IMG/VR virus record: IMGVR_UViG_3300042549_005931
Span: 124,001-188,000 of that record
DNA: 64,000 nt
Direction: 5' to 3' (one strand)
Position numbers and translations under genes: made by a program. Under the pieces are notes generated by a model. The model saw only the letters and a program-made list of their open reading frames with translations. It was not told the origin of the DNA and made no database searches. This document shows positions 16,068 to 63,665 of the stretch, piece after piece. How positions within the stretch are numbered: position 1 is the stretch's first letter; each line of letters starts with the position of its first letter.

Positions 16068-18002
16068 TTAAGCGTATTCTCTTGGGTTTACAGTCCTTGC
16101 AGCAAAACCGACTGCCGCATTTTTTCTTGCAGCTTCCGCAAATATGTCACCACCAGGATTTGATATAATATTGTGAGTATATTCAACTTTCTGTGGTGAT
16201 TGTTGTTGTACCGAAGCTATTGGATTTGGTGTCATTGTTTTTGTTAAATTATCTCTAATTATTTTTGCCTTCTCCATCCAACTTTCATAACTTGTTACGT
16301 CTAAATCTTTAATCGCATTAACAACATTTTTACCAGATTCTTGTGCCTTTTTAGGATTAGAGTCTAACTGTGTCTTTGATATTGTGTTCAGTAACTCTTT
16401 CATCTCTTTACCAAGTGCTGCCTCACCCATACCTTTTGCAAAATTTGCCGCCTGCACTTTAGCCCAAGTTGCCATAACCTCAATACCTTTTACCATTTGT
16501 TGAGTTTCTGTAAGTTGTTTCATCGCCATATCTTTAGGGCTCATATCTTCAAATGCCTTTTTGTTTGCCAATAACACATTCTTTTGTTCTTCGGTTAATT
16601 TAGATAATGTGATTTCACTTTGTTTACCTAATTTATCTTGTAAACTTTCAGGTACCACAATCTTCATTTCACCATCCTGCATTCTACTTAAGTTGGTAAT
16701 GAATTCTCTATCCTTATCGGTCATTGTTAATCCTCGAGACATTAGAGCTGTTGATGCTGCAACCCTTTCTTGTGCGGCAACTGCAGTTTTACCCAATTCT
16801 TCCATCGTCATACCTAACGCACTAGCCATTTCTCTTCCTCTTCTTAAGTTTATTCCTGTAATCTCAAATCTTCCTTGTGCTTGGTTATATGTTGCCAATC
16901 CTTTTGCCGCCCCAATTATCGAGTCTTGTAATCCCTCCATATTATTGGTAGATTCGTACATCATTTTTATTGGGTCACCCAAAGAACCTACAGCACCACC
17001 TAACACTTGTAATTTAGCCGCCATATCAATTGCACCATCAGGATTCATAACATCTTCAGCAACCTTAGCGACCTTATCCATACTTAATTTAAACTCAATG
17101 GATTTTTGAACCATTCTCTCTAAACCCTCAACACCGTTTTTAAAACCATATTCATTTAATTTACCGACACTATTTTTTATTTCAGTTGCAACCTTTGATG
17201 CATTTAATCCTAATGAAACTGACCTTGTTGCTGATTTACCAATAGCTTCTGTGGCTTCTTTAGCCCCAATACCAACTTTTTCATATTCACCAAGACTACC
17301 GGCCAATTCGGATAATGTCATGTTTAACGATGCTGCAACAGGTAATGCTTGTTCAATTGTTTGACTATTAATTAATGCAAATTTTCCTGATTGGTCAACT
17401 AAGGTTGTGTAGAACGAACCAATATCAGCTAATTCAAATCCATATCTTTTAGCCTCACCCTGAGCCGCAATCATTGACAGTTGGAGTCCGTCTGATAATT
17501 CACCACTAATACCTGTTTTTGTATTAATTTCCGACAATAAAACAGATTGTTCTTTTAATTGACCTAAAACCGCCTCACCTCCTTGTTTCGCTAACGACAT
17601 CGCTCCACCAAGAAAACCTTGCGTTTTTATTGTTTCTGCAATTTGTAAAAGAGTTTCATCACCTTGACCCTTACCTATTTGGGTCTCTAACGCCAATTTT
17701 GCTCCACCGGCAACAACTTTCACCGCACCATCAACAAGACCAAAAGCCGACTTTATACCACCGGTTAACGTGTTAATTGCATTTCCAACAAATCCTTTAT
17801 CACCAGTGGGTAATTCGGGTGTTTTGGTGAGACCACCACCAGTAAAACTTGTACTACTACCACTACTATTACCAATATTATTTTGCATTTTTTTAAATTG
17901 GTCATAAAGTTTACCCGCATTCGGGTCATTAGCGTTTTTGGAAATAAAATCACTTCTACTTGATGATTGATTAAATATGTCTAATGGAGTTAAGTTTGCC
18001 AT
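16068..18002 (-). CDS. tail tape measure protein
   Basis: Ala/Gly/Met-rich helical protein downstream of the tube and chaperone genes and upstream of the baseplate genes. Confidence 0.72.
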   Translation of the reverse strand: MANLTPLDIFNQSSSRSDFISKNANDPNAGKLYDQFKKMQNNIGNSSGSSTSFTGGGLTKTPELPTGDKGFVGNAINTLTGGIKSAFGLVDGAVKVVAGGAKLALETQIGKGQGDETLLQIAETIKTQGFLGGAMSLAKQGGEAVLGQLKEQSVLLSEINTKTGISGELSDGLQLSMIAAQGEAKRYGFELADIGSFYTTLVDQSGKFALINSQTIEQALPVAASLNMTLSELAGSLGEYEKVGIGAKEATEAIGKSATRSVSLGLNASKVATEIKNSVGKLNEYGFKNGVEGLERMVQKSIEFKLSMDKVAKVAEDVMNPDGAIDMAAKLQVLGGAVGSLGDPIKMMYESTNNMEGLQDSIIGAAKGLATYNQAQGRFEITGINLRRGREMASALGMTMEELGKTAVAAQERVAASTALMSRGLTMTDKDREFITNLSRMQDGEMKIVVPESLQDKLGKQSEITLSKLTEEQKNVLLANKKAFEDMSPKDMAMKQLTETQQMVKGIEVMATWAKVQAANFAKGMGEAALGKEMKELLNTISKTQLDSNPKKAQESGKNVVNAIKDLDVTSYESWMEKAKIIRDNLTKTMTPNPIASVQQQSPQKVEYTHNIISNPGGDIFAEAARKNAAVGFAARTVNPREYA

Positions 18003-18022
18003 ACATATAAATAGAAGAGTTA

Positions 18023-24247: not shown

Positions 24248-24760
24248 TTATACTCCTCTAAATTCAGTTTCTTGTGCCGGTGCACATGTTATTGTTCTGT
24301 AGAATGGTTTGTAACCAAACATACTATGTTTTCCATCTGAAACTACTTTACCATCGTTAGTAACTTGATAATATCTTACTCTATCTTCAGATTCTGCGTA
24401 TCCAATAAAATCACCATACTTTATATCTACACCCAATTCTTGTAAATGTTTGATATAAACTGATATTGTAATGTTACCTGGCTCATTAAATTTTATCAAT
24501 CCCGTTTTATATGATTTGTTTGTTGGTGCATCTATTTTAACCAATCCGTTAAATTCAACAGGTGGAAAATATTTGATTTGGTCTTTACCAACCTCACCAT
24601 ACACGTCGTCAGTCGTAGTTCTTGTTGTATCAACACGATATAAAACCAACTTCATATTCAAATCTCCATGTAGATACTCTGAACCCATTTGGACGTTCAA
24701 ATCAAAATCATCATTTGAAAGGAATTTAGATAGTCTTGTGATTGGTAATTTGTTTTCCAT
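24248..24760 (-). CDS. neck / head completion protein (gp14-like)
   Basis: DDVYGE..YFPPVEF and HLQELGVDIKYGDFI patterns; TATTTATA 5 nt before the ATG. Confidence 0.62.
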   Translation of the reverse strand: MENKLPITRLSKFLSNDDFDLNVQMGSEYLHGDLNMKLVLYRVDTTRTTTDDVYGEVGKDQIKYFPPVEFNGLVKIDAPTNKSYKTGLIKFNEPGNITISVYIKHLQELGVDIKYGDFIGYAESEDRVRYYQVTNDGKVVSDGKHSMFGYKPFYRTITCAPAQETEFRGV

Positions 24761-24810
24761 ATCCTTATAAATAGTAGATTTTTACGAACTTATTATTTAT
24801 ATTATAAATT

Positions 24811-49838: not shown

Positions 49839-50003
49839 ATGAAAGTCACAAAGAATGGTAATGGGTATATTTTTGAGGTGTCACTTAATGAAAAAGAAAA
49901 CCTTTATAAAATCGGGCAACTTATACTAAAAAAACAATGTAAATTCTTTTACTTCGCTACTGACAAATTATATTACATTTCAGATGTTAAATTAGAATCA
50001 TAA
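49839..50003 (+). CDS. small hypothetical protein (54 aa, not in ORF track)
   Basis: MKVTKNGNGYIFEVSLNEKENLYKIGQLILKKQCKFFYFATDKLYYISDVKLES; TATATTTG at 49827-49834, 4 nt before the ATG. Confidence 0.6.
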   Translation: MKVTKNGNGYIFEVSLNEKENLYKIGQLILKKQCKFFYFATDKLYYISDVKLES

Positions 50004-50437
50004 TAAATAACATCGACACCACACTCACCTAACATCTGTTTAGACATTTCCTGAGATTCTAACCATTTATCTTTATTTTTAGTTGTACATTCCGATTTAC
50101 AATATACAGTAGTAATTCCCGAATTAATGATTGCACGAGCACAATCTGCACAAGGTAATCCCGATGTTAAGTATATTGCAGAACCTTTAAGTGAGACACC
50201 TATACGAGCAGCGTTGTAGACTGCATTCCTTTCCGCGTGTTCAATCCAAAAGTATTTCTGTGGTCTTTCCTGACGTTCAGGTAAATCGTCTCTTAAACCC
50301 CGAGGAAATGAGTTATAACCCGTAGATAAAATTTCTTTATCCTTACCAACAATAACTGCACCTATTTGTGTTGATTCGTCTTTTGATTTGAACTTAACTT
50401 GTTCAGCAATATTTAAAAAATAATTTTTCCAATTCAT
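49973..50437 (-). CDS. dCMP deaminase
   Basis: SKDESTQIGAVI, TGYN, HAERNA, PCADC; start reassigned to MNWK (TATATTTG + 4 nt + ATG). Confidence 0.93.
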   Translation of the reverse strand: MNWKNYFLNIAEQVKFKSKDESTQIGAVIVGKDKEILSTGYNSFPRGLRDDLPERQERPQKYFWIEHAERNAVYNAARIGVSLKGSAIYLTSGLPCADCARAIINSGITTVYCKSECTTKNKDKWLESQEMSKQMLGECGVDVIYYDSNLTSEM

Positions 50438-50465
50438 ATTACAAATATACCAAAAAATTGATAAT

Positions 50466-50494
50466 AAAAAAAGGGACAACTTCGTGTCCCTTTT
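50466..50494 (-). terminator. rho-independent terminator after the major capsid gene
   Basis: AAAAGGGACA-N6-TGTCCCTTTT with a T tract on the minus strand. Confidence 0.82.
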
Positions 50495-50516
50495 AATATT
50501 ACTACAATTCTATTGA

Positions 50517-52241
50517 TTAACGTAAAGTATCGATAGAGAATGTTTGTAAACCACTTACATTAATTACACCAAAGTAACGGTTGTTAACCATTTTCTTCGC
50601 ATAACGAGTCATGATACCTTTGATAGGTGTGAAGTTAAATGGATTGTACATTGTTGGAGTTAATTGTAATGGTACGTATGGTGCGTAGATGTAACCTGCA
50701 TCCAATAATGACTTACCTTTGTGTCCAATCAAGATTTTTCCTGCTGGGAAGTAAGGGTCACGGAATACTTGGTAACGACCTGCTAATGTACCAACTTTTT
50801 CAATACCCATGTTGTATGAGTCTTGCTCAGGACCTGCGTTTGAAACGTGGAAGTACTCTAAATCGTCAAATACTGCAGAAACTTCTGAAGAAATAACAAT
50901 CCAGTTAGCACCACCTCTCAAAGTAGTCTTGTGGATTTGTGCTGAAATTTGGTTAACTTTAGTAATTAAAGTTTGGTTCCAGTCTTTTTGAGTGTAACCT
51001 TGTAAAGTTGCACCACCGTTTCCACCATATTTCCACTCATTGTAATCCCACTTAGCTGTCCAAGCCGCACCTTTACGTAAATCACGTAAGATTTCACGGT
51101 CAACCTCAGCAGCGATTTGCTCAGATAACAATGCAGTTAATTCTGCTTCAGCATCAATGTTGTGGAACGCTGAAACGTCTTGAGCTAACTCAGGAGACCA
51201 AGAAGCTCTTAATTTTCTTTCAGTTACAGAAACTGTTACAGAATCTAAATCGAAAGAAACCTCACCGATAGCATCTTCAAATTCTAAAGAAGCGTATTGA
51301 CGATAAGTTGCAACAAAGTCAGAACCAACTAAAGTTGAACCTGCAACTGTGTGGTTACTGAAACCTGCTGTAGATGAATAAGTTTGTAAATCAACGTTTA
51401 AGTAGATTACACCATTAGCATCACAAATGTCATTATATTGACCAGTAATACCTGCAGATTTTGTTCCGTATTCTACAATACCTTTACCGTATTTTTGAGT
51501 TACCACAGTAAATGGTAAAGCCGCACCCGATTGAACTTGTGCCGCTGAGATAGCCAAAGAAGCTAAGAATTCTTCAGTATCCATTTCGTTTCCGTTAGGA
51601 CCCGCTAATTTACCTGCACCACCACTAGTGAAACCTGATAACTTAACGATAACAGAACTTAAAGAAGTACCTGTAGTTCCTGTGTAAGCACTTTCAACAC
51701 CTGAAGCGAAAGTAACGATTGATGTTCCAGTTAAAGAAATTGTTGAATAATCACCTTTTGAGTAATCAAACAATCCTGAATCAGCAGCATCTGAAGTTTC
51801 ATAGAAACGGTCATAAAGATTAGTTCCTGTGTAACCAGTTGTTGCAGATGTTCCACCAGCACCACCAGGGATACCGTATGGAGAATAGTGTGCTCCTGCA
51901 TTTCTTTCCTGAATTTTAGGAATGAAATAGAATAATTTACCGATAGGTAAGTTCATAGCCTGAACTGAAACGATATCGTTCGCTAATAATTTAGAGAATA
52001 CACGACGGATGATAGGGAATACCACTGTCTCGAATGAACCTGAAGCGTCAGATACTGCTGCTTCGTTGATTAAGTAAGACGCTTGGTTTTCATATAATTG
52101 CGCGATGTTATCTCTTTGGTGACCGTTAAGACCTTCTAAAAAGCCTAAATCATCCCATTTTTTGATGGTATCTTCTTTGATAACACGAAGGTGCTTAAGA
52201 CCGATGTTACCAACCATACCTGATTCTAATAATGCTCCCAT
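50517..52241 (-). CDS. major capsid protein (T4 gp23-like)
   Basis: VSVQAMNLP.G, RKLRASWSPELAQD..AFH.IDAEAEL, YAPYVPL, P.KGIMTRY. Confidence 0.97.
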   Translation of the reverse strand: MGALLESGMVGNIGLKHLRVIKEDTIKKWDDLGFLEGLNGHQRDNIAQLYENQASYLINEAAVSDASGSFETVVFPIIRRVFSKLLANDIVSVQAMNLPIGKLFYFIPKIQERNAGAHYSPYGIPGGAGGTSATTGYTGTNLYDRFYETSDAADSGLFDYSKGDYSTISLTGTSIVTFASGVESAYTGTTGTSLSSVIVKLSGFTSGGAGKLAGPNGNEMDTEEFLASLAISAAQVQSGAALPFTVVTQKYGKGIVEYGTKSAGITGQYNDICDANGVIYLNVDLQTYSSTAGFSNHTVAGSTLVGSDFVATYRQYASLEFEDAIGEVSFDLDSVTVSVTERKLRASWSPELAQDVSAFHNIDAEAELTALLSEQIAAEVDREILRDLRKGAAWTAKWDYNEWKYGGNGGATLQGYTQKDWNQTLITKVNQISAQIHKTTLRGGANWIVISSEVSAVFDDLEYFHVSNAGPEQDSYNMGIEKVGTLAGRYQVFRDPYFPAGKILIGHKGKSLLDAGYIYAPYVPLQLTPTMYNPFNFTPIKGIMTRYAKKMVNNRYFGVINVSGLQTFSIDTLR

Positions 52242-52277
52242 TTTTTAGTTTTTGTTTTTTGGTTTAATTTTAATTTA

Positions 52278-53456
52278 TTATTTTATTTTTGACATCAAAT
52301 CCTTCATTCTTTTGAATTGTGGATTTTCGTACGCCTTTGATTCCGCTAACATTTCTTTAGAAGATGATGTTGTTGGAGTGTTAGAAATTTTATTAGCCAC
52401 TGTTTCTGTTATAGGGTTTTTAGTTTCTAACTCATTTTTTATTGTATTGAAAAGTGCTTTTGATTCGTTCATATTATTGATACCATCAAATCTCTTCAAT
52501 ATGTTTAATTTTTCTTGTTTTGTAGTTGAATGTTCTGTGAACAAACGAGTTGAATATGCTAAGTTTGCGTTGAAAACTGCAACCTCGTTAAGTTTTTCCT
52601 TGAATAAAACTAAGGCTTTCTTATATTCACCATTTTGTTTTTTCAATTTTTCAACTTCTTCGTTAATTGCTCCTGAACCTGCTTTGTATTTTGTTTTACT
52701 ATCTAAACCAGCTCTGTCTTGACCACCTTTGTTGCCATGTACATTTGATTTAGTTCTTGCAGCTTCTTCCATTTCTTCTTCTTTAGAATCATCATCTTCT
52801 TCATCTAATTCGATTTCGTAGATAACCTCATCCTCAGTCATTTCAACGTCATAAGACATATCATCACCTTCTAACATATCATCATCATCATATGACATAT
52901 CATCTTCTTCGGCAATCTCTTCACCATCTTCGTCATCGAGTTTAATGATATAATCATTATCTCCATCACTGAAGTGAACAGAGTCACCATCTTTCTTTAC
53001 GATAATACCATCTTCAGGTTTCATAGCTTTGAATACTTTCATTACTTCTTCATCAGAAGCTCCTGTCATATCCATTGCATCATCTTCATCTTCAAAAGGA
53101 TTCTCATCTTCTTCACTTTCTGAAGAATACTCATCGTCTTCTCCTTCTTCTGAATCTAAATCTTCACCTTCCTCAGAATCTAATCCTGCTGGCATTTCGT
53201 TATCAAGGTTTTCTTCTCCTTCAGCATCTTCAGCACCTTCTTCATCGGCACCTTCGTCTGACATGTCATCTGTTTCCTCTTCTTCAGGATTTGGTTGCTC
53301 AGCAACGTCTTCCTCTTTTTCCATACTTTCTTTAAGCAAGTCATTTAGTTCTTGTTTCATTGTTGAAGCAAGTATACCCTTTGCATTTTGCTTTACTGCT
53401 TCTTCAAGTGTTTGTACTTGAAGTAACGCTTGTTCTAAAATTGATTTTTCAGTCAT
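52278..53456 (-). CDS. prohead core / scaffolding protein (gp22-like)
   Basis: Highly acidic with coiled coils; lies between protease and MCP. Confidence 0.8.
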   Translation of the reverse strand: MTEKSILEQALLQVQTLEEAVKQNAKGILASTMKQELNDLLKESMEKEEDVAEQPNPEEEETDDMSDEGADEEGAEDAEGEENLDNEMPAGLDSEEGEDLDSEEGEDDEYSSESEEDENPFEDEDDAMDMTGASDEEVMKVFKAMKPEDGIIVKKDGDSVHFSDGDNDYIIKLDDEDGEEIAEEDDMSYDDDDMLEGDDMSYDVEMTEDEVIYEIELDEEDDDSKEEEMEEAARTKSNVHGNKGGQDRAGLDSKTKYKAGSGAINEEVEKLKKQNGEYKKALVLFKEKLNEVAVFNANLAYSTRLFTEHSTTKQEKLNILKRFDGINNMNESKALFNTIKNELETKNPITETVANKISNTPTTSSSKEMLAESKAYENPQFKRMKDLMSKIK

Positions 53457-53537
53457 TTTTTTGTTTTATTATCTTATAAATACTATGGTTTTATTAAAAA
53501 ATCTCTTTTAACGGGGTCATAAACAAAATAAAATCTA

Positions 53538-54221
53538 TTATTTAGATAAAAATTTGTCTAAACCACCCATTAATTTTTTCATTCTGTCATTAAGTTCAGG
53601 TTTCTCTTGTATAGACTCTTGATATTGGTCTCTATCTGCTGGGTCATTAAATACATATGCCCCCGGTGTAGATGGAGACGACACTAAGTCAAAACATACT
53701 AATTCAAAATCATCTTGAACAATATTTTGACCTCTTTCACTTTTTAATGAACCAACACCACGTGATGATATACCTAAAGTTGCACCATTCATGATTAACA
53801 TTGCCGCTTGGTCACCTTTAGTAGAAACAATACCCATCTTCTTCCAACCTGGAGAAGTGAATAACTTTATTTTACCCATTAATATTTTTCCATCCCAATA
53901 TGTTTCAAGAATTGAATGGGATACTCTATCTAAGTCGATAAGAGATGATGATGGGTGATTTAACTCATTAAGAGCACCACCTTTTTTAATAAGTGTTTGA
54001 TATTTTTCTACTTCTCTTTTAAGAAGCATTTCAGGATAGATTCTCCCGTTCTTATTTGGTGTATCGTATTTCTGTAAAACAGCATAAAGGATAAGGTCTT
54101 CTGAAAAGTCCATATCCCTCATCTCTGATATAATTTTTTTATTGTCGTCAGGGGACACATGACCCGCGTCATATTCAATAAGAATACCTTTCCCTGTTTC
54201 GTTCGGACCTAAAATCTTCAT
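53538..54221 (-). CDS. prohead protease (T4 gp21-like)
   Basis: NKNGRIYP, ELNHP, VSH, GISSRGVGS, DLVSSPSTPGA. Confidence 0.95.
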   Translation of the reverse strand: MKILGPNETGKGILIEYDAGHVSPDDNKKIISEMRDMDFSEDLILYAVLQKYDTPNKNGRIYPEMLLKREVEKYQTLIKKGGALNELNHPSSSLIDLDRVSHSILETYWDGKILMGKIKLFTSPGWKKMGIVSTKGDQAAMLIMNGATLGISSRGVGSLKSERGQNIVQDDFELVCFDLVSSPSTPGAYVFNDPADRDQYQESIQEKPELNDRMKKLMGGLDKFLSK

Positions 54222-54256
54222 TTATAGTTTTTACTATAAATACATCGATAATTAAG

Positions 54257-54682
54257 TTATTTCTTTGTTTTGTGAAAATTGTATAAATTTTTGTTAGTTA
54301 AACTATCATCAATTATACCCGAAATTAATTTTTTGATTGTATTTTTTATATCTTTTGTTTTAATATCAAATTGATTTTCAACAAAAAGTGTAATCTCTAA
54401 GTTCATAAAGGACCTTTTTTCAAGTTTTATTCCTTTTGTTCTTATATCCAAATCAACAATACATTGTTGTTTAAATAATGGATTTCTTAATTCGTAAATT
54501 GAATCTTTTATTTTACGTCTTGTTTTAAAAATTGATGAGTCGAAATCATCAGTTTCGTTTTCGGGTTGAACCCACGAATTTAATTTTAAGTAAACGGTTT
54601 TTAAATTTTTGTAATCAACGGTACCATAACCAATTTTTACGTTATTGTATTCCCCTAAAGGGATATACTTTCCTATTTTCAT
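54257..54682 (-). CDS. hypothetical protein (141 aa)
   Basis: Intact ORF divergent from bS21. Confidence 0.7.
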   Translation of the reverse strand: MKIGKYIPLGEYNNVKIGYGTVDYKNLKTVYLKLNSWVQPENETDDFDSSIFKTRRKIKDSIYELRNPLFKQQCIVDLDIRTKGIKLEKRSFMNLEITLFVENQFDIKTKDIKNTIKKLISGIIDDSLTNKNLYNFHKTKK

Positions 54683-54755
54683 TAACTTTTCATATTATTA
54701 TATTTTTATGGTGTATTCAAAATATAAGTAAAAAAAATTTAAATACAAAAAAATA

Positions 54756-54770
54756 TATTTATATTTGTAA
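54756..54770 (+). promoter_or_regulatory. composite promoter TATTTATATTTGTAA upstream of bS21
   Basis: TATTTATA 54756-54763 overlapping TATATTTG 54760-54767. Confidence 0.6.
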
Positions 54771-54787
54771 TATAAACTAATTTCCAT

Positions 54788-54976
54788 ATGTTAATTGTTG
54801 ATTTAAGTAAAGAAAAAAGTATTGAGAGTGCTTTGAGAACTTTTAAGGGTAAAGTTTTAAAAACTAAGCTTGTTCAAAAATTAAGAGAAAGACAAGAGTT
54901 CACAAAACCCTCAGTTACTAAGAGAAAACAGAAATTGAAAGCTGTTTATCTACAGAAAAAAAATGGTCTTGATTAA
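54788..54976 (+). CDS. rpsU: ribosomal protein bS21 (phage-encoded)
   Basis: IESALRTFK.KV.KT......RERQEFTKPSVTKR...KAVY, Bacteroidota-type bS21. Confidence 0.93.
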   Translation: MLIVDLSKEKSIESALRTFKGKVLKTKLVQKLRERQEFTKPSVTKRKQKLKAVYLQKKNGLD

Positions 54977-54991
54977 ACAAGACCATTTTTT
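54958..54991. terminator. bidirectional terminator spanning two convergent stop codons
   Basis: AAAAAATGGTCTTG-ATTAAA-CAAGACCATTTTTT perfect 14-bp stem. Confidence 0.75.
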
Positions 54992-55710
54992 AATTGTACC
55001 AATCTGTAATAATTAAATTTCGATGGTTTCATTTCATTAACCTCGTCTTTTACTTTGGTTAATTTACCGGTTAAATCATTATCTTTAGACTCACTCAGGA
55101 TATTACCTACTTGACCTAAAATAGATTCTTTTAAATCACTTATTTTAACTTCAAGGTCTTCGTCCGTTAAAGATAAAATACCCTGTAATTCTTTTTTCTG
55201 TGATTCATTTAATGAATTATTATATAATACATTAAAATTGTTTGCTAATACTGCATATAGAAGATTTTCATTTTCTACTAATTGTGTTTCTTCTTTTTTA
55301 ACGATTTCTTTTTTTGTTGTTAAATGTTCTACTAATTTTTTCTTCGCAATAATTTTTTTGTCAACATTACTTAAATTTTCTTCTTGAACTAATAAGTCTA
55401 AGTTTGAATATAATTCGTTTTCGTTAATTTCTACGTTTTTTAACTTTGTATTTAAATTTTTTGTGAAACTTGCGATTTTATCTGACTTGTCTTTTAAGAC
55501 CGATTGAATTTCTTCTACATACAGTTTAGCTATTTCTTTATCATCGAAGTATTTGTTTTCGATTTCTTCATAAAACAAATACATTTCTTTGAAATCTTTG
55601 TTTTCTTTAATTGTATTTAAGATATCCTTAACTTCACCTTTATTCTTGTTTGAATAAGATTCAGTTAGTTTCTTTAATATCTTTGTTTTTAATATTCCAA
55701 ATTTGTTCAT
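54973..55710 (-). CDS. head-module hypothetical protein (245 aa)
   Basis: Helical K/E-rich ORF directly downstream of portal; LTE, LNE, LKE and LSE sites. Confidence 0.7.
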   Translation of the reverse strand: MNKFGILKTKILKKLTESYSNKNKGEVKDILNTIKENKDFKEMYLFYEEIENKYFDDKEIAKLYVEEIQSVLKDKSDKIASFTKNLNTKLKNVEINENELYSNLDLLVQEENLSNVDKKIIAKKKLVEHLTTKKEIVKKEETQLVENENLLYAVLANNFNVLYNNSLNESQKKELQGILSLTDEDLEVKISDLKESILGQVGNILSESKDNDLTGKLTKVKDEVNEMKPSKFNYYRLVQLKNGLV

Positions 55711-55712
55711 TT

Positions 55713-57527
55713 TTAGTCGTTTAATATGTCTGTTATTTTAGTTTCTATTTCATAAATATTCTGTTGTGCTTTATTCATATCAAATAAGATATTAAAATCT
55801 TCTTTTTCCTCACCTAACATACCTAATATTTTTGATTTTCTTGAAGTAGATTCACTTAATGGTTCCGCAGCAGGTGCTTCGGCAGGTGCTCCACCACCCA
55901 TATCCATTCCACCACCGGCAGCAGCTTCACCACCACCTGCGGCAGCTTCAGCCTTTTCTCTTTCTTCCTCAGGGATACCATACTTAGCATCCACATTGTC
56001 GAAGATACCTGAACGTTTAATGATTAACTGACTCGTATTCATTAATTCGAAACCAACCGCTCTTTCAAGACGTTGTTGTTGTAAATCAAGTAATACTTCA
56101 GCATCACTCATACCAAGAATATTTTTCTTAGCCCATGTATGAGACACCGGTAAAATACCCATTTGAGATTGGTCAGATGTTGCATCCTTATAAAGAGTAA
56201 CCTTTTCTTTCCATTGTTCAATACGTAATAAATCAGATTGTGCTGATGGATTAGTTAAACCTAACGTAAAGTTATTTAATTCATCCTCTAAACCTAATAG
56301 ATACAAGTGAACTAATGCTATTTTATTTAACTCTTGAATAACTGATTTTTGAATTCTGTTAATTGTACGAGCAAAACGAATATCCATTAATGCTAAACTC
56401 TTACCTTCACCAACAACCTCTTCAAAACCTAAGAAAGCTTTTGGTATACGTAAAGCTGCAAGTAGTTTCTTTTGAATATATTCAATATCGGCAATTTCAC
56501 CTAAGTTTGTTGCTCCGGGTAATGTATCGATTGGACTTGGAGCTGCAGGGTCACGTACAGGGATAAAATAATCTTGGTCTACTGACATTTGATTATATCT
56601 CATATCTACCTGACCATTACGTGGGTCGGATATTTGGTCTCTTTTGAATTTACTTGCCACACGTTGTACATAAGCTTCAATATCTTTATCATCCATGTTA
56701 CCCACAAATATTTTAAAGATACGTCTTTCAGGTGCTCTTGATGTTCTATAAATTAACATCGCATCTTCAGCAAGAAGTAATTGTTTCCAAATACGTCTAA
56801 TCTTATCTAACATAGAAGTACCATAAGGTAATTTTCTATCGTCACCTAAAATTCTAAAGTGTGCAACTTCCCAAGCTTGGAATTCCATATCTTTATTCTT
56901 CCAATGGAATCTCAATTCACGTGACGGCATTTTAACATCTCTAGCTTGTCCCGCAGTTTTACTTGATGCGCCTTCCAATCTTTCAATTTCAATGTTTGGT
57001 AATTGTTGACACCCAATGATACCCTTTTCAGGGTCAATTTTTAAGTATACAAAGTTATCCCCATACTTACATAGACCTCTTGTCCACATTTGTAAGTTGG
57101 TGTTAACATCTAATACGTTTTTGAATAAGTCATCAAGGATATTCTTTACTCTTGTTGATTCAGAAAATATTGTTAATATTTCACCCTTCTCAGACATTGT
57201 GGTTGATTCTTCAGCATAGATATCTAAAGCTGCGGAAATCTCCGGAGTAAATTCCATAGATTCATAATCATAATATGCAGCCAATCTATTTGGTTCGTAA
57301 TAAACCGATTGGTTATATAATGATTGGTCAAGTTTAGCCCATTTATCAGCAATGTACTGACTTTGTTGAGCTTGTAATAACGCCTTTTCGTATTCTTCTC
57401 TACTATCGGTCTTTAATAATTCGTCTTTTGAGAAACTAAATGATGGTACTTGGTCGGGTCTTGTTTTCCCCGGATATCCAAACATCTTGGTCAATTTCTG
57501 AAAAACTGTAAAATTCTGTTCTGCCAT
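55713..57527 (-). CDS. portal protein (T4 gp20-like)
   Basis: PEISAALDIYAEE, EDAMLIYRTSRAPERRIFKI.VGN, DYFIPVR, IDTLPG, ALRIPK. Confidence 0.96.
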   Translation of the reverse strand: MAEQNFTVFQKLTKMFGYPGKTRPDQVPSFSFSKDELLKTDSREEYEKALLQAQQSQYIADKWAKLDQSLYNQSVYYEPNRLAAYYDYESMEFTPEISAALDIYAEESTTMSEKGEILTIFSESTRVKNILDDLFKNVLDVNTNLQMWTRGLCKYGDNFVYLKIDPEKGIIGCQQLPNIEIERLEGASSKTAGQARDVKMPSRELRFHWKNKDMEFQAWEVAHFRILGDDRKLPYGTSMLDKIRRIWKQLLLAEDAMLIYRTSRAPERRIFKIFVGNMDDKDIEAYVQRVASKFKRDQISDPRNGQVDMRYNQMSVDQDYFIPVRDPAAPSPIDTLPGATNLGEIADIEYIQKKLLAALRIPKAFLGFEEVVGEGKSLALMDIRFARTINRIQKSVIQELNKIALVHLYLLGLEDELNNFTLGLTNPSAQSDLLRIEQWKEKVTLYKDATSDQSQMGILPVSHTWAKKNILGMSDAEVLLDLQQQRLERAVGFELMNTSQLIIKRSGIFDNVDAKYGIPEEEREKAEAAAGGGEAAAGGGMDMGGGAPAEAPAAEPLSESTSRKSKILGMLGEEKEDFNILFDMNKAQQNIYEIETKITDILND

Positions 57528-57580
57528 TTATATAAATACTTTTTTTTATAATATAAACTAAATTATTAGTAATGGAAATA

Positions 57581-59365
57581 TTATTTTTTTCTTCCATTAA
57601 ACAACCATGAGTATTCCATATATGCTTCTCTACCAACTTGTTGATTAGTATTACCCCCATACATTGAATTGCTACTATCCATACCCATAGAACCTATTTG
57701 GTCAAATGACCCACCATATGAATAAAAAGATTTTTGTGGCTCATACGTTCTTTCAGACATTGTCCATGATTCAATCATTGCTCTATTAACTGATTCGGTT
57801 TTTTGTAATTGATTGAAACATAAATCACCAGCATATAATGCCATTGACATACTCATAATAGCATCATCGTGAGAACCTTTCATGTGGTCAGGTCTTCCGT
57901 TCATATAAACAAACGTATTAAGTTCATTTAATAGTCTACTTGACCTAACTTGAAAACCTTTTCTTAATTGTTCTTCAAATGCCGCAACAATCTGCGTTCT
58001 TTTATTGTTAAAGTTAAGACCGGGTATTTTTTCCATGGCCTTAGCGTTATATTCCCAAATGTTTTGAGTATTAACACCATCAATATAAATATTTTTATAA
58101 TTTAACTCTTGTAATTTTCTTGATGTTGCAACACCCATACCACCGGTGATATCAATAACGATAAAAGCGTTACCATATATCACACCCCACTTATACGCAA
58201 TTTGTGCCAAATCGTCCGGTGGTATCTTACCAATATATTCAAGTACTTGTTCTCTATCATCAAAATCGACAATACTAATTGCTGAAAAGTCTTCACTATC
58301 ACCTCTACTAACATCGACACCCATAATATAACGGTGACCTTCAATTGGTTCTTTCCACTGCCATAATGTAGCTTGCATGTATTTCTCAATAGGAACACGA
58401 ATCATGTTCTTAGAAATATTCTCTTGAACAAAACCCGGTATAACACCATCACCCGAACCCAAGAAGTCACACTCTAATTCTTGTGAAATTTTACGTCTAT
58501 CGTATTTGAACTTTTTAGACATAGACTCAAACCAAGATGAATATGGTTTATAACCCTGTTCTTCCAATTCTTTATAATTGGACATATCAAACTCATAAAT
58601 AACAACTTCGTTATCATCATATTGTTCTCTGTTTAACATGTAATGACATATATCCTGACATTTAACCCATCGTAAGTCTTTGGTATAACGAGGGTCTTTA
58701 AACCACCTTAAATCTGTTATGTGGAAATCATTAATTCCACGAATAGCTTGGTCGTATACACCATAATAAATTGGGTCGTAACCATTTGGAGTTGAGATTA
58801 GAATAATCTTACCACCCGTAGATAGGGAGGCCATAGATGCAGCCCAAAAATCTTCTCCTGCTTCAATATATGCAGCCTCGTCAAATACAAGTACGGTAGG
58901 TGTAAAACCACGAAGTGCATCCGCAGATGTTGCAACAGCTTTAACTTCGGAACCGTTATTTAATCTAAATCTACTCTCAGAGTTTTTATCGGGTGAAAAT
59001 CCAACATTAATCCATTCGGGCCATTGGTCTAAGAAGTTTCTAATCTTATTAGCCATTTCCACGGCGGTATCTTTCTTATTGGCAATAATCAAAACTCTTT
59101 CAGGATTTTCTGGTTTGGCAAATTGTAATTTCTTTGATAACCAAGCGGCTGTTACGGTTGTTACACCGGCCTGACGATATTTCTTTGTGATGTTTTCGTT
59201 ATAATCTTCGTAATCTTGAATTAATTGTAATTGGTCAGGAAATAGGTTCATTGGAACGAATTTCTTTTGCGTGTTATCGTATGTTTGTAGATACGTTCTT
59301 AACGCATATGGTGTATCTTTAATGATACGGGCATATTCTTTTAGTTGTTCTAATTTACTATTCAT
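57581..59365 (-). CDS. terL: terminase large subunit (T4 gp17-like)
   Basis: KYRQAGVTT, DEAA, ISTPNG, QELEC.F, GVDVSRG, HDDAIM; start reassigned to MNSKL (59365). Confidence 0.96.
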   Translation of the reverse strand: MNSKLEQLKEYARIIKDTPYALRTYLQTYDNTQKKFVPMNLFPDQLQLIQDYEDYNENITKKYRQAGVTTVTAAWLSKKLQFAKPENPERVLIIANKKDTAVEMANKIRNFLDQWPEWINVGFSPDKNSESRFRLNNGSEVKAVATSADALRGFTPTVLVFDEAAYIEAGEDFWAASMASLSTGGKIILISTPNGYDPIYYGVYDQAIRGINDFHITDLRWFKDPRYTKDLRWVKCQDICHYMLNREQYDDNEVVIYEFDMSNYKELEEQGYKPYSSWFESMSKKFKYDRRKISQELECDFLGSGDGVIPGFVQENISKNMIRVPIEKYMQATLWQWKEPIEGHRYIMGVDVSRGDSEDFSAISIVDFDDREQVLEYIGKIPPDDLAQIAYKWGVIYGNAFIVIDITGGMGVATSRKLQELNYKNIYIDGVNTQNIWEYNAKAMEKIPGLNFNNKRTQIVAAFEEQLRKGFQVRSSRLLNELNTFVYMNGRPDHMKGSHDDAIMSMSMALYAGDLCFNQLQKTESVNRAMIESWTMSERTYEPQKSFYSYGGSFDQIGSMGMDSSNSMYGGNTNQQVGREAYMEYSWLFNGRKK

Positions 59366-59369
59366 ATAG

Positions 59370-59377
59370 TATAAATA
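59370..59377 (-). promoter_or_regulatory. putative late promoter TATTTATA (one representative of about 20 copies)
   Basis: 4 nt before the TerL ATG and directly after a terminator; see findings for the other copies. Confidence 0.7.
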
Positions 59378-59378
59378 C

Positions 59379-59405
59379 AAAAAAAGGAGGTTAAACGCCT
59401 CCTTT
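59379..59405 (-). terminator. rho-independent terminator
   Basis: AAAGGAGG-N7-CCTCCTTT with a T tract on the minus strand. Confidence 0.8.
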
Positions 59406-59425
59406 ATTGTTTGTAGTCATAATGA

Positions 59426-60964
59426 TTACCTAAATTGATTTAAGAAATCTTCGTCAGATTCCTCATCATCTAAGTCGTCTTTTGAAAGTGATATTCCTTT
59501 ATCACCTAAAAAACCATTTAAATCATTTAATAATTGGTCATCATTTGTATTGTTTGACATGGAGTCAAGTTCCGTTTGATATTGTTCCATTGCATCTTCA
59601 TAATCCTCATCACGTAACATTTTAACAATACCTCCATAGATTAATGCGATTAGTCGTTTACCTCTATCCGTTTCACCCATTATTTCTTTCATTAATACCA
59701 AGAATTTTTTTGCCGGTAATGCAAAAATTTCCATCATGATATAGTTTTGAAGATTTTTATTTTGTTCTTCTAAAGTCTCTATTGGGAACGACTCATATAA
59801 TCTACGCCAAATTGCAGGTCCTAAACGTAAATCCCATATTTCATACGACAGCAATTCTTGTTTATCTCTAATTTCGGTATACATACCTTTTGATGGTTGA
59901 CCTTCTAATGCCAAAGTTTTCATCAAACCCTTTAATATTTCATGAATTAATACAGGGAAATTAACACCTTTAACTATGATATTTGTTTTTTCGGGGTCAA
60001 TTCTTGGGTCATTTGGTGTAAAATCATCCTCATCATCCTCAGGTTCATCCATATCACCACCCCCCATCATATCCCCTTCAAACTCATCGTCATCATCATC
60101 GTTCCCTGAAGTTGGTCTAACAACATCAACTCTACCGGCAATTGAACCTGCCTGAGCCATTTCTAAGTTAGCAGCACTAAATTGCCAATAATTTAAATCA
60201 TTAACTGACATCATCACACCATATAAATTGAATAATTGGTCTGAACCTGTAATTTGACGTAATCTTTCACCTAAAAGTTGGTACATCCAATGACCTTTTT
60301 TAGAAGAACCCGCAACTATCGCTTTAATTAAACGAAGCTTTGATTCTTCTAATTCTTGAGATGAATCCACATTTTGAACATCTTGAAATAACTCCATTTC
60401 CATTTCTTGATTTTCAGGTGTAATGTTGGCGATTTCTTCATCTGATAACATTTCCTCATCACTAACATCGGGGCTTTCTTGTTTTGCCGGTGAAATTTGT
60501 CCACCCATTTTAAAACCTTCTGAATTAGGATGACCCATATCTACAATAAATTTTATTTTATTTTCAATATTATCAGGTAATCCCATTTCTTTTTTAACCA
60601 CCTCAATTGCTAAATCAATAAGCTCCTGATGATAATTGCGTTCAAGTCTTTGAATTTCTGTATGTGCATTTATCATCATCATACCTAATGGTCCCATATT
60701 TTGACCAACAATTGGTCCTTGATATTGAGTTATTTGTCTAACTTTATCAACTACCTCCTTATATCTTTCAGAAGCTAAAAGTTCAAGAAAATTTTGGTTA
60801 GCCCTACCTGTTTCTGGTGTTGGAACAATACTAAGCGGTGTATTACCCGCTTCAAGGTCCCTATCAACATCAGGGTTTGGTCTTTCAGGTCCTTCGTAGT
60901 CAATTGCCATCTCTTGTAAATTTTGTTTCACCAAAGATAACAATTCTTTCTTTGTAACTTTCAT
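59426..60964 (-). CDS. acidic hypothetical protein, putative head core protein (512 aa)
   Basis: MKVTKKELLSLVKQNLQE tag; internal HEILKG; upstream of TerL. Confidence 0.65.
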   Translation of the reverse strand: MKVTKKELLSLVKQNLQEMAIDYEGPERPNPDVDRDLEAGNTPLSIVPTPETGRANQNFLELLASERYKEVVDKVRQITQYQGPIVGQNMGPLGMMMINAHTEIQRLERNYHQELIDLAIEVVKKEMGLPDNIENKIKFIVDMGHPNSEGFKMGGQISPAKQESPDVSDEEMLSDEEIANITPENQEMEMELFQDVQNVDSSQELEESKLRLIKAIVAGSSKKGHWMYQLLGERLRQITGSDQLFNLYGVMMSVNDLNYWQFSAANLEMAQAGSIAGRVDVVRPTSGNDDDDDEFEGDMMGGGDMDEPEDDEDDFTPNDPRIDPEKTNIIVKGVNFPVLIHEILKGLMKTLALEGQPSKGMYTEIRDKQELLSYEIWDLRLGPAIWRRLYESFPIETLEEQNKNLQNYIMMEIFALPAKKFLVLMKEIMGETDRGKRLIALIYGGIVKMLRDEDYEDAMEQYQTELDSMSNNTNDDQLLNDLNGFLGDKGISLSKDDLDDEESDEDFLNQFR

Positions 60965-63594: not shown

Positions 63595-63665
63595 TTTGTA
63601 TATAAATTAGATTAACTTATTCTTATCCTATAAATACATTGTAATACGGAAAAAAATAAGGTTCT

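What the first reader, a model, noticed from the sequence alone, without database searches (positions are those of the whole stretch)
54756..54976. Phage bS21 keeps Tyr54 but has no Shine-Dalgarno
Seen: a 62-aa bS21 lies antisense within the head module, with Tyr at position 54 and leader TATAAACTAATTTCCAT (no SD). Known: bS21-encoding phages with the gene beside head genes have been described. In Flavobacterium, bS21 (including Tyr54) helps sequester the anti-SD, and host rpsU is autoregulated through an unusually strong SD. Inference: the phage copy escapes that feedback, keeps the anti-SD occluded, would suppress host rpsU translation, and so remodels ribosomes for SD-less or leaderless phage mRNA.
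Basis: partly seen in the sequence, partly recalled or inferred. Interest (0 to 1): 0.6.

Follow-up and report, generated by a model that had tools for sequence, protein, structure and literature searches.

The report
Phage ribosomal protein bS21 gene cassette
A giant freshwater phage of Bacteroidota carries its own copy of ribosomal protein bS21 as a self-contained gene inside its head-gene cluster. This arrangement was published in 2022, and its lack of a Shine-Dalgarno sequence is simply the norm for this phage.

Summary
Window 54788..54976 (+) encodes a 62-aa bS21 (Pfam E 7.7e-12). It aligns without gaps to Flavobacterium johnsoniae bS21, so Tyr54 matches Tyr54. Its leader cannot pair with the anti-SD. 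The gene lies opposite to all its T4-like head-gene neighbours.

Most of this is already known. Synteny, reverse strand, GC content and tRNA load match the 'bS21 phages' of Chen et al. 2022, who already reported Tyr54 and proposed substitution into Bacteroidetes ribosomes.

The missing SD is not special. Only 5% of this phage's 296 ORFs have an SD-like leader, against 10% of random sites.

New here:
- The gene is a monocistronic cassette with a promoter-like box, a 15-20 nt AU-rich leader and a conserved bidirectional terminator.
- The box TATTTATA precedes 44 phage genes, 13 of them only 3-4 nt before ATG, which suggests leaderless mRNAs.
- One sister lineage (12 contigs) keeps a strong SD (AAAAGGAGG, -11.8 kcal/mol) before bS21 only.

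So 'escapes feedback' fits this phage but is not general to the family. Repression of host rpsU remains inference, and the host is unknown. 'Remodelling' is doubtful because host ribosomes already ignore SD sequences.

The parts
54756..54763 (+). TATTTATA, a phage-wide promoter-like box, 24 nt before the bS21 ATG
   Evidence: The record holds 67 copies, 44 of them within 60 nt upstream of a same-strand gene start. The box occurs in 37 of 143 intergenic upstream regions against 0.9 expected. It is conserved 18-24 nt upstream of bS21 in most related clades. The promoter role is inferred; no transcription start site data exist.
54760..54767 (+). TATATTTG, a perfect match to the Bacteroidetes primary-sigma -7 element TAHHTTTG, overlapping the phage box
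   Evidence: Seen in the sequence. Consensus and geometry (G at -5, transcription start 4-5 nt later) come from Baez et al. 2019. The element is conserved 17-20 nt before the ATG in the window's clade. No -33 TTTG is present.
54768..54787 (+). Predicted short 5' leader (15-20 nt, start about 54768-54773), AU-rich, without SD and unstructured
   Evidence: Anti-SD pairing is +2.4 kcal/mol. The fold of 54764-54830 is -2.6 kcal/mol with z +1.4. The initiation-region score lies at the 20th-43rd percentile of phage genes, with C at -3 and -4. The start position is inferred from promoter geometry only.
54788..54976 (+). bS21 coding sequence, 62 aa plus stop; Tyr54 codon at 54947-54949
   Evidence: dN/dS 0.06-0.31.
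54958..54991 (.). Bidirectional intrinsic terminator hairpin (14 bp) flanked by A and T runs. It contains the last codons and the stops of both bS21 and the convergent 245-aa gene.
   Evidence: dG -20.1 and -20.0 kcal/mol, z -5.7 and -5.6 on the two strands. It is conserved in 9 relatives with one compensatory pair, U-A to A-U.
54973..55710 (-). Conserved 245-aa all-helical protein of unknown function, convergent with bS21 (4-nt overlap), directly downstream of the portal gene
   Evidence: The AF2 model has pLDDT 81.8 but no PDB fold match. No Pfam or PHROG family.
54257..54682 (-). Conserved 141-aa alpha/beta protein of unknown function, divergent from bS21 across a 105-bp intergenic region
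   Evidence: The AF2 model has pLDDT 82.5; the best PDB matches are at noise level, Foldseek E 0.011 and VIA Z 7.5.
53538..54221 (-). Prohead core protease (Peptidase_S77), with a TATTTATA box at 54235-54242
   Evidence: Pfam E 2.4e-21; box.
55713..57527 (-). T4-like portal protein (gp20 family), with a TATTTATA box at 57531-57538 only 3 nt before the ATG
   Evidence: Pfam Portal_T4 E 4.2e-78. The box and its spacing are conserved in the clade.
57581..59365 (-). Large terminase, named by position and by conserved synteny with the published family; no family search was run on it here. It has a TATTTATA box at 59370-59377, 4 nt before the ATG.
50517..52241 (-). Major capsid protein
   Evidence: PHROG 138 'major head protein', E 1.8e-65.

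Best explanation
This is a working, phage-encoded copy of small-subunit ribosomal protein bS21. It sits as a self-contained one-gene cassette (own promoter-like box, short SD-less leader, own terminator) on the opposite strand inside the T4-like head-gene cluster. The carrier is a roughly 270-330 kb freshwater myophage of Bacteroidota, a member of the published 'bS21 phage' family.

The most likely mechanism is as follows. The protein is made during infection and binds host 30S subunits at the normal bS21 site through its conserved C-terminal helix. Through Tyr54 and Leu55 it keeps the 16S 3' tail (the anti-SD) tucked into the platform pocket. This keeps ribosomes replete and competent for the SD-less, A-rich or possibly leaderless phage mRNAs at a time when host bS21 supply may fail.

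Because its own leader has no SD, its synthesis is not coupled to the pool of bS21-free ribosomes, unlike host rpsU and unlike the SD-bearing sister phage lineage. The systematically altered N-terminal half may add a preference for phage mRNAs.

Shown here: identity, conservation, anatomy, absence of an SD, and the family context. Inferred: incorporation into 30S, occlusion of the anti-SD, timing of expression, and any effect on host rpsU.
For: - Identity and Tyr54 equivalence.
- Purifying selection: dN/dS 0.06-0.31.
- Same synteny and orientation in about 60 related viral contigs, matching Chen et al. 2022. That paper also reports bS21 among the most transcribed phage genes together with late structural genes.
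- The residues that contact the 16S tail in F. johnsoniae are Tyr54 and Ile55. The window has Y54 and L55, and the whole helix 38-56 is shared with Flavobacteriales bS21.
- The phage is of the Bacteroidia type: SD sequences are depleted, initiation regions are A-rich with A at -3 in 62% of genes, TAnnTTTG promoters occur, and the nearest bacterial bS21 are Bacteroidota.
- Ribosomes lacking bS21 initiate worse on SD-less mRNA (McNutt 2023).
- Cassette anatomy: promoter-like boxes, unstructured leader and terminator.
- The SD-bearing sister lineage shows that phage bS21 genes interact with the anti-SD circuit.
- According to the discussion in McNutt 2023, the bS21 of another phage (HTVC008M) enters E. 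coli ribosomes.
Against: - There is no direct evidence that this protein is expressed, enters 30S or occludes the anti-SD. The RNA libraries found held short contigs over the protease and the 245-aa gene but none over bS21.
- Twelve positions in the N-terminal half differ completely or almost completely from Flavobacteriales bS21, including loss of Arg14, Arg18, Arg21 and Arg/Lys30. The C-terminal tail is more basic (+6) than in Maribacter (+1). Its behaviour on the ribosome may therefore differ from host bS21.
- The host is unknown.
- The promoter and transcription start assignments are motif inference only.
Confidence: 0.6

Rival explanations
1. The SD-less phage copy is a feedback-blind competitor. 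It fills the bS21-free 30S pool, which shuts off translation of the host's SD-dependent rpsU mRNA. It progressively replaces host bS21 and so converts the ribosome population to a phage-type one that favours SD-less or leaderless phage mRNAs.
For: The window leader has no SD, whereas many Bacteroidota rpsU genes depend on a very strong SD that is read best by bS21-free ribosomes (examples). Tyr54 is kept. The N-terminal half is phage-specific (Chen 2022). Thirteen phage genes carry the promoter-like box 3-4 nt before ATG, which suggests leaderless mRNAs, and this is conserved at the portal gene.
Against: Lack of an SD is the genome-wide default, not a trait of this gene. A sister lineage has a conserved strong SD on bS21, so the family does not uniformly escape feedback. 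The host and its rpsU leader are unknown, and SD-regulated rpsU is lineage-dependent. Host ribosomes already ignore SD sequences, so occlusion by Tyr54 adds no new specificity. Most host leaders are also SD-less, so this mechanism alone cannot tell phage mRNAs from host mRNAs. McNutt et al. argue the opposite direction, that autoregulation would help the host restore its own bS21.
Confidence: 0.25
2. This is a plain supply model with no selectivity. The phage copy is functionally equivalent to host bS21. It only compensates for the loss of the loosely bound, late-assembling host protein after host transcription is shut off or a host defence stalls translation. It has no effect on mRNA choice.
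For: bS21 is added last to the 30S subunit and can dissociate, and its loss lowers initiation on SD-less mRNA. The C-terminal anchoring helix and Tyr54 are conserved. The SD-bearing sister lineage looks like a homeostatic, demand-coupled supply. No other pocket component (bS18, bS6) or S1 is encoded in the record.
Against: Twelve N-terminal positions are fixed differently in 45 distinct phage sequences compared with 25 Flavobacteriales sequences. This points to long-term selection for a property that the host protein lacks.
Confidence: 0.3
3. The protein acts off the ribosome. It might be packaged in the capsid and delivered with the DNA, or it might bind another RNA or protein partner such as one of the two conserved flanking proteins. 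Its place in the head module would then reflect a structural or early-injected role.
For: The gene lies among prohead core genes, between the portal and the protease. Chen et al. raise encapsidation as a possibility and note that a neighbouring opposite-strand gene has a matching phylogeny.
Against: All ribosome-anchoring features are conserved. The gene sits on the opposite strand with its own promoter-like box and terminator, so it is not part of the head operon. The flanking proteins gave no functional clue. I did not test binding.
Confidence: 0.07

Closest known systems
bS21-encoding freshwater Bacteroidetes jumbo phages, clades a-e of Chen et al. 2022, ISME Commun 2:31 (PMC9723584)
   Same: bS21 lies on the reverse strand between two conserved hypothetical genes, flanked by TerL, portal, prohead protease and MCP. 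Tyr54 is kept. GC is 32.3% (published range 31.0-33.7%). The record has 22-24 tRNAs (published 5-25) and is 269 kb at 81% estimated completeness (published 293-331 kb).
   Different: Nothing substantive differs; this is a further member. The paper did not examine leaders, SD sequences, promoters or terminators. The cassette anatomy, the TATTTATA box and the SD-bearing sublineage are additions made here.
Host rpsU/bS21 of Flavobacterium johnsoniae and other Bacteroidia (Jha et al. 2021, PMC7797042; McNutt et al. 2023, PMC9976891)
   Same: Same family and length, with a gapless alignment. Shared features are Tyr54, a hydrophobic residue at position 55, the KPS motif and the C-terminal helix 38-56. 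A host-type -7 promoter element is also present upstream.
   Different: The window has no extended SD, at +2.4 kcal/mol against -12.6 to -13.3 for canonical-SD rpsU leaders. Residues 8-10, 14, 18, 21, 23, 24, 27, 28, 30 and 34 are phage-specific. The C-terminal tail is more basic than in Flavobacteriales. Identity to F. johnsoniae bS21 is about 46% over residues 1-57, counted by hand from the alignment.
SD-bearing sister lineage of the same phage family (loci L023-L029 = L106-L112, and L113-L117)
   Same: Same synteny and orientation, same TATTTATA box 19-20 nt upstream, Tyr54, and 64-66% protein identity to the window.
   Different: The leader carries AAAAGGAGG 8-9 nt before the ATG (-11.8 kcal/mol). 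It is conserved between two sublineages that differ in 14% of bS21 residues. Neighbouring genes lack it, and AAGGAGG is not enriched in a 166-kb record.
bS21 of Pelagibacter phage HTVC008M and other aquatic phages (Mizuno et al. 2019, as cited in McNutt 2023)
   Same: A phage-encoded bS21. It is reported to enter E. coli ribosomes in vivo, which supports the general substitution model.
   Different: It belongs to a different phage lineage whose host uses SD sequences. I did not compare the sequences here.

Membership tests
Ribosomal protein bS21 (Pfam PF01165) | Significant match to the family profile over nearly its full length | tested here: met
   E 7.7e-12, 45.2 bits against a cut-off of 27, profile positions 2-52 of 55. 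PDB bS21 chains match at E 1.5e-10 to 6.7e-3.
Bacteroidia-type bS21 (anti-SD sequestering) | Signature Tyr at F. johnsoniae position 54, which stacks on A1534 | tested here: met
   Gapless alignment 1-57 to 7jil_z places Tyr54 on Tyr54. Tyr is present in 44 of 45 distinct phage sequences and in all 25 Flavobacteriales sequences.
Bacteroidia-type bS21 (anti-SD sequestering) | Hydrophobic residue at position 55 that contacts the 3' tail (Ile55) | tested here: met
   The window has Leu55; relatives have L, I or V. This is a conservative change, and its effect is untested.
Bacteroidia-type bS21 (anti-SD sequestering) | C-terminal domain (after Ser42) markedly less basic than in other phyla | tested here: inconclusive
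   Net charge is +6 (pI 10.4) in the window, against +1 in Maribacter and +4 to +5 in Hymenobacter, Pontibacter and a Bacteroidales MAG. No set from other phyla was compared here.
Bacteroidia-type bS21 (anti-SD sequestering) | Actually binds 30S and occludes the anti-SD | not testable with these tools
   This needs ribosome mass spectrometry, reporter assays or cryo-EM.
'bS21 phages' of Chen et al. 2022 | bS21 on the reverse strand between two conserved hypothetical genes, within a few genes of TerL, portal, prohead protease and MCP | tested here: met
   The same order holds in about 60 related contigs. Published description.
'bS21 phages' of Chen et al. 2022 | Large genome (293-331 kb), GC 31-33.7%, 5-25 tRNAs, standard genetic code | tested here: met
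   The record is 269,133 bp at 81% estimated completeness, with GC 32.3% and 22-24 tRNAs. ORFs are open under table 11 with 93% coding density.
'bS21 phages' of Chen et al. 2022 | Placement inside clades a-e on the TerL tree | not tested
My protease+141-aa tree only relates the window to IMG/VR contigs.
rpsU-type autoregulatory leader (extended SD read by bS21-free ribosomes) | Exceptionally strong SD upstream of the bS21 start codon, standing out from all other genes | tested here: not met
   The window leader pairs at +2.4 kcal/mol with the 9-nt anti-SD and at +0.8 with the 14-nt 3' tail. The feature is met instead in the sister lineage L023/L113, at -11.8 and -12.2.

The most novel reading that the evidence does not exclude
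Phage bS21 genes of this family may come in two regulatory versions at the same locus. One is SD-less and blind to feedback (this window and most clades). The other carries an extended SD and is coupled to demand (the L023/L113 lineage). That would show that these phages are wired into, or deliberately unplugged from, the host's anti-SD sequestration circuit. In the SD-less version the phage protein would act as an unregulated occupant of the bS21 site. It would silence SD-dependent host rpsU and lock ribosomes in the SD-blind state that suits the phage's short-leader and possibly leaderless late mRNAs (TATTTATA followed by 3-4 nt and ATG at portal, TerL and 11 other genes).
Probability: 0.25. 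Interest if true: 0.65.

Novelty: new member of a known kind. Interest (0 to 1): 0.35.

Why it matters
The gene itself only adds one more genome to a family described in 2022. Its value lies in the comparison. The same phage family offers a natural pair of bS21 leaders, one without an SD and one with a conserved strong SD, in hosts where strong SD sequences are essentially reserved for rpsU autoregulation. That makes two open questions directly testable with existing F. johnsoniae tools (an rpsU depletion strain and strong-SD versus SD-less GFP reporters). The first is whether phage bS21 occludes the anti-SD as host bS21 does. The second is whether phages exploit or evade the specialised ribosomes that lack bS21. 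The genome-wide TATTTATA box, with its preferred 3-4 nt spacing to ATG, also gives a concrete lead on promoters and possible leaderless translation in Bacteroidota phages.

Tried and rejected
- Megablast of window 50000-60000 against 50,697 GenBank phage records found no match.
- RNA evidence gave no verdict. One search found four runs kept only as assembled contigs. Three RNA libraries from one study hold near-identical short contigs over the protease (53617-54226) and over the 245-aa gene and portal end (55035-55769), but none over bS21. Contigs cannot show starts, strands or levels, and DNA carry-over is possible.
- Rfam found no family in the window at gathering thresholds.
- The flanking 141-aa and 245-aa proteins stay without an assigned function. 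They have no Pfam or PHROG family (one weak 18-bit PHROG hit was ignored) and no ESM Atlas look-alike. Their AF2 models are confident (pLDDT 82.5 and 81.8), but matches are at noise level: Foldseek E >= 0.011, and VIA Z 7.5 for the 141-aa model. Weak hits of the 141-aa model to aIF2-alpha C-terminal domains (E 0.02, TM 0.33-0.48) were not taken as evidence.
- No complex prediction was run, because I make no binding claim.
- Chance antisense ORF: rejected (Pfam match, dN/dS, conserved synteny).
- Recent capture from a host: rejected. Twelve positions are fixed differently from Flavobacteriales bS21 across 45 distinct phage sequences, in agreement with Chen et al.
- bS21 mRNA itself leaderless: rejected for the window, where the box lies 24 nt upstream. 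The L009-L022 subclade does have TATTTATA only 4 nt before the ATG.
- Other pocket components in the phage: bS18, bS6 and S1 were not found in the 81%-complete record.
- My sample of 30 Flavobacteriales rpsU leaders used one canonical anti-SD for all genomes. It therefore undercounts lineages with variant 16S tails and does not contradict the 80% figure of McNutt et al..
- In one search, four short bacterial bS21 sequences were copied into the script from the output.
Full report
**What is there**

The window is bases 124001-188000 of a 269,133-bp IMG/VR virus record with an estimated completeness of 81% and GC 32.3%. At 54788..54976 on the + strand lies a 62-codon ORF. It matches Pfam Ribosomal_S21 at E 7.7e-12, 45.2 bits against a cut-off of 27, and the PHROG family 'ribosomal protein S21'.

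Its best solved relatives are two Bacteroidota-like bS21 chains, 9i5v_9 (E 1.5e-10) and F. johnsoniae 7jil_z (E 8.7e-9). Both align residues 1-57 to 1-57 without gaps. Tyr54 (codon 54947-54949) is therefore the equivalent of F. johnsoniae Tyr54.

The 17 bases before the ATG read TATAAACTAATTTCCAT and do not pair with the anti-SD (+2.4 kcal/mol).

Every neighbour is on the - strand:
- major capsid protein, 50517-52241 (PHROG 138)
- an acidic scaffold-like protein, 52278-53456
- prohead protease S77, 53538-54221
- a 141-aa protein, 54257-54682
- a 245-aa protein, 54973-55710
- T4-like portal, 55713-57527
- TerL, 57581-59365

**Is the gene real?**

Against relatives at 58-97% protein identity, dN/dS over the first 56 codons is 0.06-0.31, with synonymous sites near saturation. 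Two scans of IMG/VR gave 150 loci, some of them from the same contigs. In about 60 contigs the order protease(-), 141-aa(-), bS21(+), 245-aa(-), portal(-), TerL(-) is kept. It is a conserved, selected gene.

**It is a member of a published family**

Chen et al. 2022 (PMC9723584) described 47 phage genomes plus 14 from IMG/VR, 293-331 kb long, with GC 31.0-33.7% and 5-25 tRNAs, from freshwater lakes. [quoted passage not shown]

They predicted Bacteroidetes hosts. They found Tyr54 in 54 of 61 phage bS21 and an aromatic residue in all of them. They mapped phage-specific changes to the N-terminal helix, found bS21 transcribed together with late structural genes, and proposed substitution into Bacteroidetes ribosomes with a preference for phage transcripts.

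The window matches on synteny, orientation, GC content, tRNA number (22 by ARAGORN, 24 by Rfam) and size. The core of the finding is therefore already known. The paper says nothing about leaders, SD sequences, promoters or autoregulation. Two further literature searches found no paper on that topic.

**Is the missing SD meaningful?**

Within the phage it is not. Of 296 crudely called ORFs, only 5.1% have an upstream stretch that pairs with the anti-SD at -4.5 kcal/mol or better, against 9.9% of random positions. GGAGG occurs before 2 of the 296.

The start-region logo is of the Bacteroidia type: A-rich at -14 to -10, A at -3 in 62% and at -5 in 60% of genes, and G at 3-10% (compare Baez et al. 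2019). The bS21 start region is ordinary to weak, at the 20th-43rd percentile, with C at -3 and -4. It is unstructured, at -2.6 kcal/mol with z +1.4.

The contrast is with host rpsU. Jha et al. 2021 and McNutt et al. 2023 showed that bS21 (Tyr54, Ile55), bS18 and bS6 sequester the 16S 3' tail. They also showed that rpsU carries an exceptionally strong SD that is read best by ribosomes lacking bS21, and that Y54A derepresses an rpsU reporter about 3-fold. By their count, strong-SD rpsU occurs in about 80% of Flavobacteriales, nearly all Sphingobacteriales, half of Chitinophagales, 20% of Cytophagales and no Bacteroidales.

My own look gave these results:
- Maribacter rpsU has AGAAAGGAGGT (-12.6) and Pontibacter has -8.4. 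Hymenobacter, Rufibacter and Bacteroidales MAGs have none.
- Of 30 rpsU loci from 81 sampled Flavobacteriales genomes, 7 had a canonical SD at -8 or better and 21 had none. All 30 had Tyr54. This undercounts genomes with variant 16S tails.

The phage gene therefore does lack the element that host autoregulation needs. Whether the real host has that element is unknown.

**A sister lineage does have the SD**

Seven contigs (L023-L029) and five more (L113-L117) carry AAAAGGAGGAAAAAAA(A)T before the bS21 ATG. These are four distinct combinations of leader and protein. The pairing energy is -11.8 kcal/mol with the 9-nt anti-SD and -12.2 with the 14-nt 3' tail. The spacing is 8-9 nt, as in bacterial rpsU.

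The two sublineages differ in 14% of bS21 residues and in the sequence just upstream, yet the SD stretch is identical. The neighbouring protease, 141-aa, 245-aa and portal genes have no SD.

In the 166-kb record of this lineage, AAGGAGG occurs 13 times against 19 for the reversed control. The bS21 site is the only one in a clean intergenic arrangement of SD, spacer and ATG-started ORF.

On a protease+141-aa tree the SD-bearing contigs form one clade (support 100/98). That clade is nested in the second of the two major clades, and the window sits in the first. The bS21 protein of this lineage is of the phage type, so the SD was kept or evolved in place and was not re-imported with a host gene.

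This mirrors the host rule of one strong SD per genome, located at rpsU. It is indirect evidence that phage bS21 synthesis can be tied to the pool of bS21-free ribosomes. It also shows that 'escape from feedback' is a lineage trait and not a property of the family.

**Anatomy of the cassette**

The octamer TATTTATA occurs 67 times in the record. Forty-four copies lie within 60 nt upstream of a gene start on the same strand. It occurs in 37 of 143 intergenic upstream regions, against 0.9 expected.

It precedes the scaffold, protease, portal and TerL genes, many other genes, and bS21 itself (54756-54763, 24 nt before the ATG). It is conserved before bS21, portal and protease in relatives.

Overlapping it is TATATTTG (54760-54767), a perfect match to the host primary-sigma -7 element TAHHTTTG. 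In that element G sits at -5 and transcription starts 4-5 nt later. Either box predicts a start at about 54768-54773 and a 15-20 nt leader.

At the 3' end, a 14-bp hairpin flanked by A and T runs (54958-54991) folds at -20 kcal/mol on both strands, with z about -5.7. It is conserved with one compensatory pair. It holds the last codons and the stops of both bS21 (…KNGLD) and the convergent 245-aa gene (…KNGLV). This gives a second, non-ribosomal reason for the conserved C-terminus in this clade.

The gene is thus an independent, moron-like, monocistronic unit of about 220 nt. All promoter and transcription start statements are inference. The only RNA libraries found are kept as contigs and do not cover bS21.

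**Possible leaderless mRNAs**

Thirteen of the 44 boxes lie exactly 3 or 4 nt before an ATG. These include portal (57531-57538) and TerL (59370-59377), and the portal arrangement is kept in five relatives. With host-like geometry, transcription would start at or next to the A of the ATG.

In F. johnsoniae, 87% of predicted leaders exceed 10 nt. A set of leaderless late genes would therefore be a phage peculiarity.

**How phage bS21 differs from host bS21**

I compared 45 distinct phage sequences with 25 distinct Flavobacteriales sequences.
- Shared positions: 1, 15, 16, 20, 22, 26, 32, 33, 35, 38, 40, 42, 43, 46, 51, 52, 54 and 56. These include the anchoring C-terminal helix.
- No overlap in residues: positions 8, 9, 10, 14, 21 and 28.
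- Almost no overlap: positions 18, 23, 24, 27, 30 and 34.

Arg14, Arg18, Arg21 and Arg/Lys30 are lost, Asp24 becomes Tyr, Gln or Leu, and Gly27 becomes Lys. This reproduces Chen et al.'s result.

The tail after Ser42 carries +6 net charge, against +1 in Maribacter and +4 to +5 in other Bacteroidia. The record encodes no bS18, bS6 or S1.

**Judgement**

The best explanation (confidence 0.6) is a functional phage bS21. It occupies the normal site on host 30S and keeps the anti-SD sequestered. It thereby keeps ribosomes competent for SD-less phage mRNAs, and in this phage it is expressed without coupling to anti-SD availability. An added preference for phage mRNAs through the altered N-terminal half is possible.

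Its 'remodelling' step is weak, because host-replete ribosomes are already blind to SD sequences (confidence 0.25). A plain supply role (0.3) and an off-ribosome or packaged role (0.07) remain open. These figures are judged one by one and overlap, because the first three share the incorporation step.

**Novelty and score**

The finding is a new member of a known kind, and its headline features are published. The added value lies in the cassette anatomy, the phage-wide TATTTATA box with its 3-4 nt class, and above all the SD-bearing sister lineage. That lineage turns the feedback question into a simple comparative experiment. Interest 0.35.

Noticed in passing
Genome-wide; in the window for example 53475-53482(-), 54235-54242(-), 54756-54763(+), 57531-57538(-), 59370-59377(-), 63629-63636(-): The octamer TATTTATA is a strongly position-biased promoter-like box. 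The record holds 67 copies, 44 of them within 60 nt upstream of a same-strand gene start, and it occurs in 37 of 143 upstream regions against 0.9 expected. It differs from the host -7 element TAHHTTTG. Read on the opposite strand, it is the T4 late-promoter word TATAAATA.
   Followed up: partly
Window 57527-57538(-) portal, 59365-59377(-) TerL, 18002-18013(-), 24760-24773(-), and 9 more outside the window: Thirteen genes have the box exactly 3 or 4 nt before the ATG, so their mRNAs may be leaderless. The portal arrangement is conserved in five related contigs (L003, L006, L007, L010, L012).
   Followed up: partly
L023-L029 (= L106-L112) about 2980-3000; L113-L117 about 1480-1500: A sister lineage of the same phage family carries a conserved strong SD (AAAAGGAGG, -11.8 kcal/mol) in front of bS21 and of no neighbouring gene. 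This mirrors host rpsU autoregulatory leaders.
   Followed up: yes
Same virus record, outside the window: G000:C1:213221-213603 (L186:10222-10604): A full-length GOLLD RNA (Rfam RF02032, 280 bits, E 1.2e-79) lies next to the tRNA cluster.
   Followed up: no
Same virus record, outside the window: G000:C1:215469-215870 (L186:12470-12871) and 203558-210601: There is a phage-encoded tmRNA (Rfam RF00023, 87 bits; ARAGORN tag GNVYKNMEIAGILATSNVAVA) and a cluster of 22-24 tRNA genes. Together with bS21 this makes a sizeable translation toolkit.
   Followed up: partly
L009-L022, the 30 nt before the bS21 ATG: In this subclade a TATTTATA box sits only 4 nt (in L011, 1 nt) before the bS21 ATG, with TATATTTG 17 nt upstream. 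Here bS21 itself may be leaderless or have two starts.
   Followed up: no
L087-L090 (Allomuricauda and Flagellimonas genomes), L191 (second copy in the Maribacter genome G001): Some Flavobacteriaceae genomes hold a divergent second bS21 gene without an SD (MLKIEVKPGESIERALKRYKRKYRNTKRLEQIRERQEFTKKS…). Like the phage proteins, it has the RERQEFTK motif. It could be a paralogue or a prophage gene.
   Followed up: no
L072 (MAG 'Flavobacteriaceae bacterium SAT1509', 24-kb contig) compared with L038: The bS21 and its leader on this MAG contig are identical in protein sequence to those of viral contig L038, and the leaders differ by a single-base insertion. The contig is probably a phage contig binned with a Flavobacteriaceae genome, which is at most a weak host hint for a different bS21 phage group.
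   Followed up: no
Window 52278-53456(-) and 55713-57527(-): The scaffold-like protein is extremely acidic, with long D/E runs. The portal protein has a C-terminal Gly/Ala-rich stretch (…AAAGGGEAAAGGGMDMGGGAPAEAP…), which accounts for internal AAGGAGG words in related records.
   Followed up: no
Window about 128856-143853 in window numbering (G000 about 252.8-267.9 kb, outside the 64-kb window): Host-type promoters (TTTG or TTG about 20 nt upstream of TAnnTTTG) cluster before small + strand genes in this region. This is possibly the early region, as opposed to the TATTTATA class elsewhere.
   Followed up: no
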